In this document: positions 3,773-9,196 of the stretch, in pieces | How positions within the stretch are numbered: the stretch's first letter is position 1 | How the letters are laid out: each line of letters opens with the position of its first letter | IMG/VR virus record: IMGVR_UViG_3300009093_000034 | Coordinates: 124,001 to 188,000 of that record | Reading direction: 5' to 3' (one strand) | DNA length: 64,000 nt | Made by a program: the position numbers and the translations under genes | The notes under the pieces: model-generated | Told to the model about the DNA's origin: nothing | The model's input: only the letters and a program-made list of their open reading frames with translations | The model's database searches: none

Positions 3773-3791
3773 GACTCAAGTTTGATCTACG

Positions 3792-3821
3792 AAATCCGGC
3801 CTTCGGGCCGGATTTTTTTTT
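3792..3821 (+). terminator. Rho-independent terminator
   Basis: AAATCCGGCC-TTCG-GGCCGGATTT followed by T run. Confidence 0.9.
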
Positions 3822-3871
3822 GACAAAAAGTTTCTATTTGACTAATTACTTGAGATATTGATATTACACAA

Positions 3872-4022
3872 CAAATCGCGGTGGTTGTAACTCATACTTC
3901 GAACAAACTGTAAATTTGTCTATTGTAGGTGAGAATCCTACCGTCCCCACCAAACTTATTGTATACTACAGTCAGCTTGGTGGGGATGATGAAAAATCAG
4001 AGTTCCTAAATATTCCCGATTT
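3872..4022 (+). ncRNA. Circularly permuted tRNA-mimic RNA 1 (YrlA/Y-RNA-like) carrying a GUA anticodon-like arm
   Basis: T arm 3925-3941; acceptor 3942-3953 pairs with downstream 3977-3988; ends pair (AAATCG..GG / CC.CGATTT). Confidence 0.6.
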
Positions 4023-4027
4023 TATAC

Positions 4028-4101
4028 GCTACGTTAGCTCATGTAGGTAGAGCAGCTGATTTGTAACCAGCAGGCGAAGGGTGCAAGTCCTTTACGTAGC
4101 A
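4028..4101 (+). tRNA. tRNA-Thr(TGT)
   Basis: Cloverleaf, acceptor GCTACGT/ACGTAGC, loop TT-TGT-AA; no CCA. Confidence 0.85.
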
Positions 4102-4104
4102 TCA

Positions 4105-4460
4105 TTCTTTCTCTTTACCCGAAAGAGACTGGACCGAAAGGGTAGTTGGATAGCGGCGGTAGTTTTGAGGAGTTTCTTACTTCTCTGAAAGAACAATCCG
4201 TCCTTGAACAGCCTCCAACGAAGTAAGAAAGGGTCACGTTCGACTTATCCGGAGCGTGAATCTAAATGGTCTATGACCAGGGGATTAAAAGCACCGGAGG
4301 TTGGGAAGCAGCCAAGAATCAGTACTCGGTGGGCGGGAGTGGCCAAAACTGATTCATTCGTAGCGACGGGAAGATCGATTTCATCTTCTCCACCACAAGG
4401 CATCTTGATGAGATCTCTTGTGGGGGAAAATAAAGATCGAGACTCATTAGTTTCCTACAA
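4105..4460 (+). ncRNA. Large orphan structured RNA
   Basis: Helices 4173-4183/4220-4230, 4212-4216/4296-4300 (pseudoknot), 4316-4323/4348-4355, 4393-4399/4417-4423; no credible ORF. Confidence 0.55.
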
Positions 4461-4463
4461 CAT

Positions 4464-4548
4464 GGATAGGTACGTTAGCGGCTATACAGGCGGTCTTGAA
4501 AACCGTTCGCTCCGCAAGGAGCCGTGAGTTCGAGTCTCACCCTATCCG
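4464..4548 (+). tRNA. tRNA-Ser(TGA)
   Basis: GGATAGG/CCTATCC, loop CT-TGA-AA, long variable arm, G73. Confidence 0.9.
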
Positions 4549-4551
4549 GAA

Positions 4552-4890
4552 AAATCCAACCGATACAGGTCGATCGGAAATGGTGTACGTACCTAGTTTG
4601 CGCTAGGATCGCAATGCGGGACTTCAAACCTGTTTGAGTGGTGAATCATAACCCTCAAGTTGGAATTCATTTTCCTTCTTCGAAGATTCACGCCGAAAGG
4701 TAAAACCGCTCAATTTTTTGAAATAAGGACAATTCCTATGCTAACCCCTTAGATAAGGGAAGGCAGAAAGAATCGGTGAGGTGTTTTGATAGTACTCTTG
4801 GGACCACGGGTGTTCACTCAAAAGAGGCTAACAATGGGAAAAGAACAATTGTCATCTAACATCTACTAGATGAGTTCTTAGTACCAATGT
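4552..4890 (+). ncRNA. Large orphan structured RNA
   Basis: 4555-4560/4659-4664 crossing 4641-4647/4685-4691; 4841-4858/4867-4879; no ORF. Confidence 0.5.
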
Positions 4891-4896
4891 TTTAAC

Positions 4897-4979
4897 GGGT
4901 AGGTGTCTCGAGCGGCAAAGAGGGCGGACTGTAAATCCGTTGCGTTAACGCTTCGTGGGTTCGAGTCCCACCCTGCCCA
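4897..4979 (+). tRNA. tRNA-Tyr(GTA)
   Basis: Canonical type II cloverleaf, loop CT-GTA-AA. Confidence 0.9.
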
Positions 4980-5089
4980 TAAACACGGGCCGAAAGGCGG
5001 TCAAGCTCAAGCGTGTCTAAAAATCTTGAGTAGCAGGTTGGCTATGCTTCGTAAGGAACCAACTAGGGCAGACGCCGAAAAGGTCGAAC

Positions 5090-5176
5090 GGGAGTTGTCT
5101 CCGTCACCTGACTGTAAATCAGGCGTGACAAAACGGACGGAATAGATCACAAGTGGAGCATTACCACCAACTCTCA
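5090..5176 (+). ncRNA. D-armless tRNA-like RNA with GUA anticodon arm
   Basis: 8-bp acceptor GGGAGTTG/CAACTCTC, CCTGA-CTGTAAA-TCAGG arm, T-like arm GTGG-AGCATTA-CCAC. Confidence 0.55.
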
Positions 5177-5339
5177 TAAATCTTTTCTGTTAGCGCGCGT
5201 GTTGATGGAAGAGTCGCTTTTGATGTGTAGGCATAGGTTCACCCTCTGTGCCATGCAGAAAGAGAAATGAAATTCTGTTATTGGAGCCGAGATTTACCGG
5301 TGAGCTTTGGTAACGCTGGATGGAGTAACCAGCAAACAT

Positions 5340-5421
5340 GGTGGTCGTGGAGAAATGGTAGCCTCGCTAGATTGTGGATCTGGTGCTTAATCGCGTGCGG
5401 GTTCGAGCCCCGTCGACCACC
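5340..5421 (+). tRNA. tRNA-His(GTG), unusually long variable region
   Basis: G-1:C73, loop TT-GTG-GA, 13-nt variable region. Confidence 0.85.
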
Positions 5422-5458
5422 CTTTGATGGAATCACTAATTTGTAAGAGGTGATTGCT

Positions 5459-5749
5459 ATGACCAGTCAAGAAGGCCTTCAGGCTCAAGTAAACGACATC
5501 TTCGAAGAGATTCGACGAGAGGTTGATCCTGACGCAGCTTATGGAAATGAAGACGAAGCTATTGAAGAACTTTTCACAAAGTTTGATCTGAAGCTTTCTG
5601 AAGTCTTCAAGGGCTGGTCCAGATCTCCATCTGGAGATGTCGAACAAGCTCTTAATTGGGCTGTGAGAAACTCTGGAAGCGGAGTTTTTGTCTATGATCC
5701 AACTGACGAAGGATCTGGACAAGTCACAATTTTGAAGATCATCGAGTAA
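5459..5749 (+). CDS. Acidic hypothetical protein
   Basis: RBS AAGAGG, typical codon usage. Confidence 0.65.
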   Translation: MTSQEGLQAQVNDIFEEIRREVDPDAAYGNEDEAIEELFTKFDLKLSEVFKGWSRSPSGDVEQALNWAVRNSGSGVFVYDPTDEGSGQVTILKIIE

Positions 5750-5752
5750 GAA

Positions 5753-6028
5753 ATGTCTAGGTCTAAAGAGTTTAGACGAGAACGTGAAAAGGTCCAAAAG
5801 ACCAAGAGTAGGAAACTACTCAGGCGTTGGTGGAAAGTAGGAACTAAGATCGAAGAACCTTCGGACAGAGCAGTTGGTCATATGACCAGTACTCATCGAA
5901 GACCTTGTTCTTGTGAGATGTGTTGTAACCCACGACGTAGTGTTCTTTCTAGTGGTGAGTCAAAGCTTACCATTCAAGAAAGAAAAGACAAAGACGAGTC
6001 TCTTCATCAACTTAAAGAGGCTGCATAA
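5753..6028 (+). CDS. Basic hypothetical protein with CSCxxCCNPRR motif
   Basis: Cys motif seen in small phage proteins. Confidence 0.7.
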   Translation: MSRSKEFRREREKVQKTKSRKLLRRWWKVGTKIEEPSDRAVGHMTSTHRRPCSCEMCCNPRRSVLSSGESKLTIQERKDKDESLHQLKEAA

Positions 6029-6090
6029 AGGAGTGCTTGATGCACTTGATTAGAAATTGTGTCAATGACACCATTTAAGTTTTGAAAGAA

Positions 6091-6255
6091 AAAGAAAGCG
6101 TCGGTGGTTAGACTTACTTCGGATTATCAACCGCGTGGTGTGGGTTCGATTCCCATAGCTCTCCCTAAAACATCTTTGAGATAGGGTTTTTTAGGGAGAG
6201 CTTAGCTTAATGGATAGAGCACGTAACTTAGTTTGACCGATTATTACCTTTCTTT
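6091..6255 (+). ncRNA. Circularly permuted tRNA-mimic RNA 2 (YrlA/Y-RNA-like)
   Basis: T arm 6140-6156, then 14-bp acceptor 6157-6170/6189-6202 closed by a hairpin, then D arm 6203-6220; 5' and 3' ends pair in place of the anticodon arm. Confidence 0.75.
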
Positions 6256-6259
6256 ATAT

Positions 6260-6330
6260 AGACCCTTAGTGTAACGGAAACATGTGAAGCCTTGAACTTC
6301 ATGTCGCGGGTTCAACTCCTGCAGGGTCTA
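6260..6330 (+). tRNA. tRNA-Gln(TTG)
   Basis: TGAAG-CC-TTG-AA-CTTCA arm, T arm, acceptor AGACCCT/AGGGTCT. Confidence 0.85.
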
Positions 6331-6459
6331 ACCATTAGGTTATATGTCTGTACCGATCTAGGACGTTGCACGACTTCTTTCTTGGGATTAAGAGAAGCCG
6401 TGTCAGGCCTGGGGTAAAAAGCAGATTGGACGCTCAAGACCCAGCGAAGCGTTCATCAT

Positions 6460-7805: not shown

Positions 7806-8273
7806 ATGGAACAACTATCAGAATCCTTAGGCGTCGGCTTCTACAGAGTAGGTCGAATCACCATCCCAGTAAGAATGGCATCACATGCCACAGATCGCCT
7901 GGAACAAAGGTTTCCTGGTGTTGAGATCTCCCAAGTTAAAGAGATATTGAATAAGGGTGTTCAGCAGATCGCCCAACCAAGTGGTCACGTTGAACTTGGG
8001 CAATATTTGATCATCGATCAAAATGATGGTGTGATGTTGCCTATCAAGATTCAGAAGAATGATCGACCTGGGTATGAGAGACAAACCATGGGATTCATCC
8101 CAACGGTTATGGATTGGAAACTTCAATCAGACTCTGATTACCCTGAAGATCTCTTAGACAAGTACCACTTCTTGAAGAAGATCTACGTAGAAAGTGCTTC
8201 ACGATGGGAGGTTCCCAATCTGTCGAAGACAGGAACCTTTAATGGAGAACCTTGTACCATCATCTACGTCTAA
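7806..8273 (+). CDS. Hypothetical protein
   Basis: 155-aa ORF in operon. Confidence 0.6.
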   Translation: MEQLSESLGVGFYRVGRITIPVRMASHATDRLEQRFPGVEISQVKEILNKGVQQIAQPSGHVELGQYLIIDQNDGVMLPIKIQKNDRPGYERQTMGFIPTVMDWKLQSDSDYPEDLLDKYHFLKKIYVESASRWEVPNLSKTGTFNGEPCTIIYV

Positions 8274-8284
8274 AGGAATTTGAC

Positions 8285-9196
8285 ATGAGTGACACCTTAA
8301 CACTAGAGATCCTAGTCGGTGCCCCTGCTTCTGGTAAGTCCACTTACGCAGAAGAAAAACTAAAGACTGAGAAGAACTGGGTGAGGATCAACAAAGATAC
8401 CTTGAGAACCCAACTTCGTCAGGCCAAGAAAGATTTTACCGAGCGTGAGCTCAACAGTATTGAAGACATTCACATTGAGGCTGCGCTCAAAGCGGGATCA
8501 AGCGTGATCGTTGACGACACCAACTTGAATCCTTTCCATGTCAAAGATCGTCTACGACCTTTGGGACGGAAGTACGGAGCCAGAGTTCTTGTTAACACTG
8601 AGTTTCTTAAGGTTCCTGTGGAAGAACTGATTTCTCGAGACAAGAGACGAAAGAACTCTGTTGGTGCAGATGTCATCAACGACATGGTCGACAGGTTCTA
8701 TGCTACTTGGCTTAGGAACGCCACTCCTTGGTTGGATACAATCAAGGAAAACAAAGAGAAGACTCCTGTTTATCTCTTTGACTTGGACGGTACCTTGGCC
8801 TTCGCTACAGAGCGAGGTTGGTACGAGGACAAGTTGGCAGGAACGGACACTCCTAACATTCCTGTCATGGGAATCTTGAAGAGTCTTCTTCGCTCTGTGA
8901 GAGTCATCTTTGTTTCTGGTCGAGAAGATAAGTCTTGGCAAGTCACGTGGGATTGGCTCATTAAGCACAGTGAAGTAGGTTTTGACACGTGGGATTCTGG
9001 TCAACCTATGCTCTTGATGAGAAAGACGGGTGACGAGCGTTCTGATGACGTAGTCAAGGCTGAGATCTATAACGAGCAGATCAAGGACAACTTCAATGTT
9101 CTTGGGATCTTCGATGATCGACCTAAGGTCGTTCGAATGTGGAAGTCTCTTGGCTTGTTTGTGTTCGATTGTTACCAATCTGACCAAGAGTTCTAA
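8285..9196 (+). CDS. pseT: Polynucleotide 5'-kinase/3'-phosphatase (T4 PseT-like)
   Basis: P-loop GAPASGKST, RINKDTLR, HAD motif FDLDGT, FDDRPKVV. Confidence 0.93.
   Translation: MSDTLTLEILVGAPASGKSTYAEEKLKTEKNWVRINKDTLRTQLRQAKKDFTERELNSIEDIHIEAALKAGSSVIVDDTNLNPFHVKDRLRPLGRKYGARVLVNTEFLKVPVEELISRDKRRKNSVGADVINDMVDRFYATWLRNATPWLDTIKENKEKTPVYLFDLDGTLAFATERGWYEDKLAGTDTPNIPVMGILKSLLRSVRVIFVSGREDKSWQVTWDWLIKHSEVGFDTWDSGQPMLLMRKTGDERSDDVVKAEIYNEQIKDNFNVLGIFDDRPKVVRMWKSLGLFVFDCYQSDQEF

What the first reader, a model, noticed from the sequence alone, without database searches (positions are those of the whole stretch)
4105..4890. Two ~350-nt pseudoknotted domains flanking tRNA-Ser: possibly one ~790-nt ornate RNA
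Both flanks lack credible ORFs and show many complementary pairs, including crossing helices (4173-83/4220-30 with 4212-16/4296-4300; 4555-60/4659-64 with 4641-47/4685-91). Large ornate phage RNAs such as GOLLD and ROOL occur in tRNA clusters, and GOLLD can carry embedded tRNAs. I cannot assign a family by eye.
Basis: partly seen in the sequence, partly recalled or inferred. Interest (0 to 1): 0.68.

Follow-up and report, generated by a model that had tools for sequence, protein, structure and literature searches.

The report
Conserved non-coding spacers between phage tRNAs
The two stretches around tRNA-Ser are not one giant GOLLD/ROOL-like RNA. They are two separate non-coding spacers in the tRNA array of a 306-kb soil phage, and their tRNA-adjacent cores are nearly identical in a related phage, so they are probably small processed RNAs of unknown function.

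Summary
The window lies in a 305,833-bp terminally repeated soil/rhizosphere jumbo phage with 50 tRNA genes. The finding covers two tRNA spacers, sp1 (4102-4462) and sp2 (4550-4896), around tRNA-Ser(TGA).

Both spacers are non-coding, and the helices it cites exist. But 5-8-bp complementary pairs are no more frequent than in shuffled sequence. Only the 11-bp helix 4173-83/4220-30 beats chance. Folding z-scores are ordinary.

**Known families.** GOLLD, ROOL and every other Rfam family fail to match, even at E<=10.

**Comparison with a related phage.** A mine-metagenome relative (contig L002 plus laid contigs) shows each spacer has two parts:
- a conserved core abutting the upstream tRNA: sp1 core 4102-~4358 (about 96% identical) and sp2 core 4549-4717 (98.2%);
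- a window-specific 3' filler (4359-4462 and 4718-4896) that the relative lacks.

The tRNA-Ser between the cores is only 62% identical, and the nearby 91-aa ORF is 68% identical.

**Structure.** Covariation exists only for the neighbouring sp3 core (4980-5089), not for sp1 or sp2.

**Best reading.** These are separate conserved spacer RNAs, co-transcribed with the tRNAs and released by tRNA processing. Their function is unknown, and expression is untested because no RNA runs exist.

The parts
3838..3865 (+). Sigma-70-like promoter candidate (TTGACT-16-GATATT) just after the terminator of the upstream gene. It is the likely start of the polycistronic tRNA/spacer transcript.
   Evidence: promoter scan; terminator at 3791-3816. 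This is a consensus match only.
4028..4101 (+). tRNA-Thr(TGT), the upstream boundary of spacer 1.
   Evidence: No substitution is listed within it on the relative's contig (X3 record 8).
4102..4358 (+). Spacer-1 core (~257 nt). It is non-coding and conserved, and it starts at the first base after tRNA-Thr. In the relative it runs directly into tRNA-Ser.
   Evidence: only 7 substitutions in 4102-4297, against about 23 listed substitutions plus indels in 3866-4027. L002 1-29 matches about 4333-4358 and tRNA-Ser follows at once. There is no Rfam match and no paralog in the genome.
4173..4230 (+). Perfect 11-bp helix (4173-4183 with 4220-4230) enclosing a 36-nt loop.
   Evidence: 1.5% of shuffles reach 11 bp. 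It is invariant in the X3 and X4 contigs. The relative's variant folds with this helix, and its substitutions break the competing local hairpin 4162-4194.
4359..4462 (+). Window-specific 104-nt filler between the sp1 core and tRNA-Ser. It contains a T-arm-like hairpin (4369-4391) and a 10/11-bp hairpin (4388-4427).
   Evidence: It is absent from L002, where the core abuts tRNA-Ser. The hairpins were read.
4463..4549 (+). tRNA-Ser(TGA) between the two spacers.
   Evidence: The tRNA-Ser(TGA) at the same place in L002 is only 62% identical.
4549..4717 (+). Spacer-2 core (~169 nt), non-coding. It is the most conserved segment of the whole comparison. Its predicted fold is three 5' hairpins plus a 3' multibranch domain closed by a 9-bp stem, followed by a T-run.
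   Evidence: 165/168 bases are identical to L002 117-285. All 3 substitutions fall in unpaired positions (P=0.16, uninformative). There is no paralog by covariance model R2 in the whole genome.
4718..4896 (+). Window-specific 179-nt filler between the sp2 core and tRNA-Tyr.
   Evidence: L002 has a tRNA-Tyr-like element and an HNH endonuclease gene here instead. No HNH remnant is present in the window.
4897..4979 (+). tRNA-Tyr(GTA), the downstream boundary of spacer 2.
4980..5089 (+). Spacer-3 core (110 nt), outside the finding. It is the same kind of element and the only one with covariation support.
   Evidence: It is 90.9% identical to L002 878-987. Two compensatory pairs occur (5006/5030 and 5007/5029), and only 1 pair is broken by 10 substitutions on the window-only MFE (P=0.02).

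Best explanation
The region is a stretch of a long phage tRNA operon. Two independent non-coding modules sit directly 3' of tRNA genes: the sp1 core (4102-~4358) and the sp2 core (4549-4717). A third, the sp3 core (4980-5089), lies next door.

The proposed mechanism has these steps:
1. The modules are transcribed on the + strand together with the tRNAs, probably from the promoter-like site near 3838 (inferred).
2. The nucleases that mature the flanking tRNAs cut them out: RNase P at the 5' end of the next tRNA, and 3'-end processing of the previous one (inferred). In the related phage each core is bounded exactly by two tRNA genes (shown). Processing would therefore release RNAs of about 257, 170 and 110 nt (inferred).
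3. The released RNAs act as small stable structured RNAs whose sequence, not only fold, is constrained (inferred from conservation). Their target is unknown.

Some of it looks like decayed tRNA or hairpin debris.
For: - The region is non-coding.
- It is on the same strand as 20 tRNAs, with a promoter-like site and an upstream terminator.
- Core boundaries coincide exactly with tRNA ends in L002.
- Identity by segment between window and relative: sp2 core 98.2%, sp1 core about 96%, sp3 core 90.9%. By comparison, tRNA-His is 92.7%, tRNA-Val 86.8%, tRNA-Ser(GGA) 76.6%, the 91-aa ORF 68.2% and tRNA-Ser(TGA) 62.1%.
- The sp3 core has two compensatory pairs, and its substitutions avoid the stems.
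- Other hairpins in the same non-coding tract keep pairing through multiple double changes (3944-3986; 6157-6202 against L002). RNA-level selection therefore acts in this tract.
- The sp1 core folds better on the + strand than on the - strand (-75.2 against -60.4 kcal/mol).
Against: - No RNA data exist. No listed run that holds the DNA is an RNA run.
- sp1 and sp2 themselves have too few substitutions to show covariation. The sp1 substitutions do not fit its MFE (P=0.28), and sp2 gives P=0.16.
- Thermodynamic z-scores are ordinary.
- Only two lineages are known, so high identity could reflect recent recombination rather than selection.
- No homologs were found in IMG/VR, GTDB genomes, GenBank phages, or two other phage tRNA arrays.
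Confidence: 0.5

Rival explanations
1. The spacers are neutral filler: remnants of decayed tRNA genes and insertion/deletion debris in a fast-turnover tRNA array. The near-identity of the cores between the two phages reflects recent recombinational exchange of cassettes, not function.
For: - The array is mosaic. Modules are reshuffled relative to the tRNAs, with an HNH homing endonuclease gene and 104-248-nt indels between relatives.
- tRNA-like fragments occur in the fillers (5090-5177; T-arm-like hairpins).
- Folding energies are ordinary.
- There is no covariation in sp1 or sp2.
Against: - Homology starts at the first base after the upstream tRNA. For sp1 and sp2 the adjoining tRNA-Ser is only 62% identical, and sp2 ends exactly at the next tRNA-like gene. 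This is not expected of random recombination breakpoints.
- Three separate patches would each need their own exchange.
- The sp3 core shows compensatory changes.
Confidence: 0.3
2. One reading: sp1, tRNA-Ser and sp2 form one large ornate RNA (GOLLD/ROOL-like) with the tRNA embedded in a linker.
For: - The setting is a phage tRNA island. GOLLD and ROOL occur there, and GOLLD linkers can carry tRNAs (PMC12286853).
- The sp1 core, a tRNA-Ser and the sp2 core keep the same order in both phages.
- Several GAAA-capped hairpins are present, and CCGAAAGG is locally enriched.
Against: - GOLLD, ROOL and all other Rfam models give no hit at E<=10.
- 283 of the 786 nt are absent in the relative.
- sp1-sp2 complementarity is not above shuffles.
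- The claimed pseudoknots are chance-level, and one is weakened in the relative.
- z-scores are ordinary.
Confidence: 0.06
3. The cores act at the DNA level, for example as promoters or operator sites for phage or host factors, or as recombination cassettes like the promoter-stem-loop cassettes of T4-type phages.
For: - Sequence rather than structure is conserved in sp1 and sp2.
- sp2 folds equally well on both strands.
- Modules are reshuffled between relatives.
Against: - No sigma-70-like promoter lies inside the spacers on the + strand.
- 170-257 nt is long for a binding site.
- The cores are single copy in the genome, unlike repeated cassettes.
- The predicted sp3 stems contain G-U pairs that work only on the + strand RNA.
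Confidence: 0.1
4. The cores begin with self-cleaving ribozymes (HDV-like 'theta' type) that trim the 3' trailer of the upstream tRNA.
For: - The cores start exactly at tRNA 3' ends.
- Theta ribozymes sit within 5 nt of phage tRNAs (PMC10879173).
Against: - No ribozyme family is hit at E<=10.
- My own nested double-pseudoknot descriptor finds nothing after tRNA-Ser or tRNA-Tyr. After tRNA-Thr it finds only chance-level hits, and over the whole region it gives 13 starts against 2-22 in shuffles.
- The cores are 110-257 nt and unrelated to one another.
Confidence: 0.03

Closest known systems
Small stable RNAs of the phage T4 tRNA gene cluster (species 1 and 2, RNA C and D; from my own knowledge of the T4 literature, not retrievable in the paper library)
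   Same: They are non-coding RNAs of roughly 100-150 nt encoded among phage tRNA genes, co-transcribed with them and released by tRNA-processing nucleases. Their function is still unknown.
   Different: No sequence relation was tested or expected. The cores here are up to 257 nt. Expression and processing are not shown. The host and phage lineage are unrelated (a soil jumbo phage).
GOLLD (RF02032) and ROOL (RF03087) large ornate RNAs
   Same: They are found in phages and prophages near tRNA islands. GOLLD may carry tRNAs in its linker (PMC12286853). They are non-coding and rich in hairpins.
   Different: There is no covariance-model match. The region has no conserved domain of 400 nt or more. 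The conserved pieces are 170-257 nt, separable, and show no supported pseudoknots or long-range pairing.
Theta (minimal HDV-like) ribozymes next to phage tRNAs (PMC10879173)
   Same: They sit immediately 3' of phage tRNA genes, in phages that may carry suppressor tRNAs. This phage has a tRNA(CTA).
   Different: No nested double pseudoknot is found. The cores are larger and have dissimilar sequences. Theta ribozymes are known from gut Caudoviricetes, not soil phages.
tRNA-like processing elements (for example plant mitochondrial t-elements; from my own knowledge)
   Same: Neighbouring elements (3926-3986, 6138-6222) combine a T-arm with an acceptor-like hairpin. They could recruit RNase P or RNase Z to cut the polycistronic transcript.
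   Different: The sp1 and sp2 cores themselves give no tRNA-model hit. The tRNA-like features lie in the fillers and in flanking spacers.

Membership tests
GOLLD (Rfam RF02032) | Match to the covariance model of the universally conserved 3' domain (416 positions, gathering score 150 bits). | tested here: not met
   No match at E<=10 in the whole 305,833-bp genome. Nothing in the region with permissive filters.
GOLLD (Rfam RF02032) | Total size often above 800 nt, with a conserved multi-pseudoknot 3' region and a variable 5' region (PMC12286853). | tested here: not met
   The conserved pieces are 257 and 169 nt. 283 nt of the proposed 786 are missing in the relative. The pseudoknot helices are at chance level.
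GOLLD (Rfam RF02032) | Encoded in a phage or prophage near a tRNA island, sometimes with a tRNA in the linker. | tested here: met
   Jumbo phage with 50 tRNAs, and tRNA-Ser lies between the two cores. This is context only and not diagnostic.
ROOL (Rfam RF03087) | Match to the 574-position covariance model (gathering score 99.1 bits). | tested here: not met
   No match at E<=10 in the whole genome. The control genomes also gave no match, so the run has no positive control. Full-library cmscan searches were also negative.
HDV-like / theta ribozyme | Nested double pseudoknot (P1, P1.1, P2, P3, P4) with a catalytic C, starting within about 5 nt of the tRNA 3' end. | tested here: not met
   My descriptor scan found none after tRNA-Ser or tRNA-Tyr, and the region-wide count is within the shuffle range. 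No Rfam ribozyme family is hit. The descriptor is my own approximation, not the published RNArobo file.
tRNA / tRNA-like (Rfam RF00005) | Cloverleaf model match. | tested here: not met
   No RF00005 hit inside 4102-4462 or 4550-4896 at E<=10. ARAGORN at relaxed thresholds finds nothing on the + strand there.
Phage tRNA-operon small stable RNAs (T4 species 1/2 type) | Encoded between tRNA genes on the same strand and non-coding. | tested here: met
   The cores are bounded by tRNA genes in the relative.
Phage tRNA-operon small stable RNAs (T4 species 1/2 type) | Accumulates as a discrete processed RNA during infection. | not testable with these tools
   No run holding the sequence is on record as RNA. 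The host is unknown.

The most novel reading that the evidence does not exclude
The spacer cores (sp1, sp2, sp3) are new families of sequence-constrained structured RNAs that jumbo phages embed in tRNA operons and release by tRNA processing. Together with the neighbouring permuted tRNA-like hairpin elements, they may form an RNA toolkit that acts on host translation or on tRNA-targeting defence. A polynucleotide kinase of the tRNA-repair type lies 3.5 kb downstream.
Probability: 0.3. Interest if true: 0.7.

Novelty: new member of a known kind. Interest (0 to 1): 0.4.

Why it matters
Phage tRNA islands are where GOLLD and ROOL were found, and the small stable RNAs of the T4 tRNA cluster have, to my knowledge, no known function. 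This soil jumbo phage has about 1.35 kb of non-coding, non-tRNA sequence between 3773 and 5449. Parts of it are better conserved than the adjacent tRNAs and proteins. If these cores are processed RNAs, they add new families to a poorly understood class. They also give defined 110-257-nt candidates for expression, structure probing and deletion. If they are only recombination debris, the case is a caution: complementary pairs picked by eye in a 350-nt spacer are expected by chance.

Tried and rejected
- **Rfam.** Gathering and E<=10 scans of the window, of 4095-5345 alone and of the first 124 kb of the genome found only tRNAs. GOLLD and ROOL were searched genome-wide with no hit. My first guess at the GOLLD accession (RF01998) was wrong; it is a group II intron domain.\n- **Alternative genetic codes.** TAG=Q and table 4 open no convincing frame. 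The genome shows no recoding signal.\n- **Paralogs.** blastn of the spacers against the genome, and covariance models R1 and R2 over all 306 kb plus L002, L005 and L006, found none.\n- **Relatives.**\n - GenBank phages: tRNA hits only.\n - IMG/VR, by two flanking proteins, an alignment of the 91-aa ORF and four DNA patterns: none.\n - GTDB genomes, two patterns: none.\n - JGI metagenomes, sp2 20-mer: only the same phage again (L003, L004).\n - Word search with the upstream 361-aa protein: self only.\n - Homologs of the L002 HNH gene led to two other phage tRNA arrays without the modules.\n- **HNH remnants in the window spacers:** none.\n- **HDV-like descriptor:** chance level.\n- **sp1-sp2 inter-domain pairing:** not above shuffles.\n- **Loose 'T-arm plus long hairpin' descriptor over the genome:** about 200 hits per strand, so uninformative.\n- **Relaxed ARAGORN for pseudo-tRNAs in the spacers:** nothing credible.\n- **Long-range inverted repeats from the spacers into the 91-aa ORF (I3, I4, I6):** I judged these chance-level by a back-of-envelope count and did not pursue them.

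Full report
**Context.** The window is bases 124,001-188,000 of a 305,833-bp virus record with direct terminal repeats. The runs that hold the sequence are rhizosphere, soil, mine and groundwater metagenomes, and none is on record as RNA. ARAGORN finds 50 tRNA genes in the genome, all on the + strand. Twenty of them lie in the window. The finding spans two spacers: sp1 (4102-4462, 361 nt) between tRNA-Thr(TGT) and tRNA-Ser(TGA), and sp2 (4550-4896, 347 nt) between tRNA-Ser and tRNA-Tyr(GTA). A third spacer of 361 nt (sp3, 4980-5340) follows before tRNA-His. A terminator (3791-3816) and a sigma-70-like promoter candidate (3838-3865) precede the array. No + strand promoter or canonical terminator is predicted inside the spacers. 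A polynucleotide kinase gene (8252-9196, phrog_505) lies just downstream.

**Checking the observation.** The spacers are non-coding.
- The only + strand ORF of 50 aa or more (4204-4527) runs through the tRNA.
- Alternative codes do not help.
- None of the candidate ORFs is a called gene in the large protein collection, whereas the real neighbouring 91-aa ORF (5753-6028) is.
- However, any 350-nt sequence of this composition contains about 50 complementary pairs of 5 bp or more. The observed counts (50 for sp1, 56 for sp2) equal those of dinucleotide shuffles.
- Only the perfect 11-bp helix 4173-83/4220-30 is unusual (1.5% of shuffles).
- MFE z-scores are -1.96 for sp1 and -0.95 for sp2, and -1.4 to -1.6 for the cores alone.

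**Known families.** Full-library cmscan at gathering threshold, and at E<=10 on 8.3 kb and on 1.25 kb, reports nothing in the spacers except noise far below threshold. GOLLD (RF02032) and ROOL (RF03087) give no match at E<=10 anywhere in the genome. The first 124 kb holds only tRNAs. An HDV-like nested-pseudoknot descriptor, motivated by the theta ribozymes found within 5 nt of phage tRNAs (PMC10879173), finds nothing after tRNA-Ser or tRNA-Tyr. Elsewhere it gives only chance-level hits.

**Comparative evidence.** Close relatives are scarce. Searches of GenBank phages, IMG/VR, GTDB genomes and JGI metagenomes returned only tRNA hits or the same phage again. Two sources were informative.

1. 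Laying Logan contigs of four metagenomes on 3800-6300 revealed a related phage in a mine metagenome (X3).
   - One contig covers 3866-4334. It has no listed change in tRNA-Thr and 7 substitutions in 4102-4297.
   - The same contig has 23 listed substitutions plus indels in the 162 nt upstream of the tRNA.
2. The 91-aa ORF has one relative, 73% identical, on a 2,728-nt contig of the same sample (L002). Its layout is:
   - the end of the sp1 core (matching about 4333-4358), directly followed by a tRNA-Ser(TGA);
   - the sp2 core (L002 117-285 = window 4549-4717), directly followed by an uncalled tRNA-Tyr-like sequence and an HNH endonuclease gene;
   - the sp3 core (878-987 = window 4980-5089), directly followed by tRNA-His.

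Window bases 4359-4462, 4718-4896 and 5090-5334 have no counterpart in L002.

| Segment | Identity, window vs L002 |
|---|---|
| sp2 core | 98.2% |
| tRNA-Trp | 94.5% |
| tRNA-His | 92.7% |
| sp3 core | 90.9% |
| tRNA-Val | 86.8% |
| tRNA-Ser(GGA) | 76.6% |
| 91-aa ORF | 68.2% |
| tRNA-Ser(TGA) | 62.1% |

The cores are therefore as conserved as, or more conserved than, the tRNAs. Their boundaries coincide with tRNA gene ends.

**Structure.**
- **sp3 core.** RNAalifold finds 31 pairs with two compensatory double changes (5006/5030 and 5007/5029). On the MFE of the window sequence alone, the relative's 10 substitutions break only one pair (P=0.02 by permutation).
- **sp2 core.** All three substitutions are unpaired, which is uninformative (P=0.16).
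- **sp1 core.** The seven substitutions do not fit the window MFE (P=0.28). They break the local hairpin 4162-4194, and the relative's own MFE uses the 11-bp helix instead.
- **Elsewhere in the same non-coding tract.** Hairpins are kept through many double changes (3944-3986; 6157-6202 against L002 1752-1793). RNA-level selection does act here.

**One RNA or several.** Several results argue against a single 790-nt unit.
- 283 nt of the proposed element are dispensable.
- The intervening tRNA-Ser is essentially a different gene in the relative.
- In another sample (X4) the sp3 core is followed by a different neighbour.
- sp1-sp2 duplex potential equals that of shuffles.
- Covariance models of the cores find no second copy in the genome or in two other phage tRNA arrays.

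A two-domain RNA with an exchangeable tRNA linker cannot be formally excluded, but nothing supports it.

**Most likely mechanism.**
- Shown: the region is non-coding, the modules are conserved and bounded by tRNAs, they are on the same strand as the tRNAs, and the sister module sp3 shows covariation.
- Inferred: the modules are co-transcribed from the promoter near 3838, excised by RNase P and tRNA 3'-end processing, and accumulate as small RNAs of about 257 and 170 nt.
- Unknown: what they do.

The closest precedent I know is the pair of small stable RNAs in the T4 tRNA cluster. I cite this from memory, because the paper library returned nothing. The main rival (0.3) is neutral filler whose identity reflects recent cassette exchange in a highly mosaic array.

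**Limits.** Only two lineages are available. There are no RNA data. The sp1 comparison rests on differences listed by read laying, which hides changes within about 35 nt of the ends of an aligned piece, not on a retrieved sequence.

Noticed in passing
window 6138-6245 (+); L002 1735-1815: This is a permuted tRNA-like element. A canonical T-arm (6140-6156, TTCGATT loop) is followed by a perfect 14-bp hairpin (6157-6170/6189-6202) and then a D-arm-like segment. L002 has the same layout, with a 13-bp hairpin that differs at 10 of 13 positions, all compensated. ARAGORN calls a tRNA when the two halves are re-joined in silico. The anticodon arm is unresolved, so a true permuted tRNA gene is not established.
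   Followed up: partly
window 3881-3986 (+): A sub-threshold tRNA-like hit (3881-3949, 28 bits against a cut-off of 29) has a GTA anticodon loop and an encoded ...CCACCA end. That 3' end forms the 5' arm of a 20-bp hairpin (3944-3963/3967-3986), 41 nt upstream of tRNA-Thr. The X3 contig shows four compensatory pairs in this hairpin: 3952/3978, 3953/3977, 3955/3975 and 3956/3974. A similar hairpin (4388-4427) sits 35 nt upstream of tRNA-Ser, inside the window-only filler.
   Followed up: partly
window 6259-6334; L002 1849-1922: tRNA-Gln(TTG) in the window corresponds to a tRNA-Trp(CCA) at the same position in the relative. They are 82% identical, and the changes are concentrated in the anticodon loop. 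This is an apparent anticodon switch between closely related tRNA genes.
   Followed up: partly
window 5090-5177; L002 286-376: These are uncalled tRNA-Tyr-like sequences, with a GGGAGTT 5' end, a CTGTAAA anticodon loop and a pairing 3' strand. In the window the element follows the sp3 core. In L002 it follows the sp2 core and precedes an HNH endonuclease gene (377-880). The two are only about 55% identical, so homology is uncertain.
   Followed up: partly
window 35775-35849: This tRNA has anticodon CTA, making it an amber suppressor type (ARAGORN labels it Pyl; 68.6 bits in Rfam). TAG is the rarest stop of long ORFs (34 of 293), but I saw no evidence that the phage recodes TAG.
   Followed up: partly
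window 8252-9196 (+): A polynucleotide kinase gene (phrog_505, E=8e-72) is embedded in the tRNA region. It is the type used by T4-like phages to repair tRNAs cut by host anticodon nucleases (the function is inferred from the family name).
   Followed up: no
window 4134, 4693, 4990 (and 5075): The motif CCGAAAGG (a GAAA loop closed by C-G pairs) occurs 3 times within 1 kb of the spacers, out of 13 + strand copies in the 306-kb genome. A fourth, CCGAAAAGG, is at 5075. This is a local enrichment of GNRA-type hairpins. Its significance was not tested further.
   Followed up: no
L002 2093-2304: The relative has a 212-nt non-coding insert between tRNA-Ser(GGA) and tRNA-Val, which are only 4 nt apart in the window (6624/6629). 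Presence or absence of 100-250-nt non-coding modules between tRNAs is therefore a general feature of this phage group.
   Followed up: no
genome 89383-89456 and 115277-115352 (outside the window): ARAGORN reports two tRNA-like genes with irregular (2-nt) anticodon assignments. An HNH endonuclease homolog also lies between tRNA-Thr and tRNA-Ala at genome 108228-108557.
   Followed up: no
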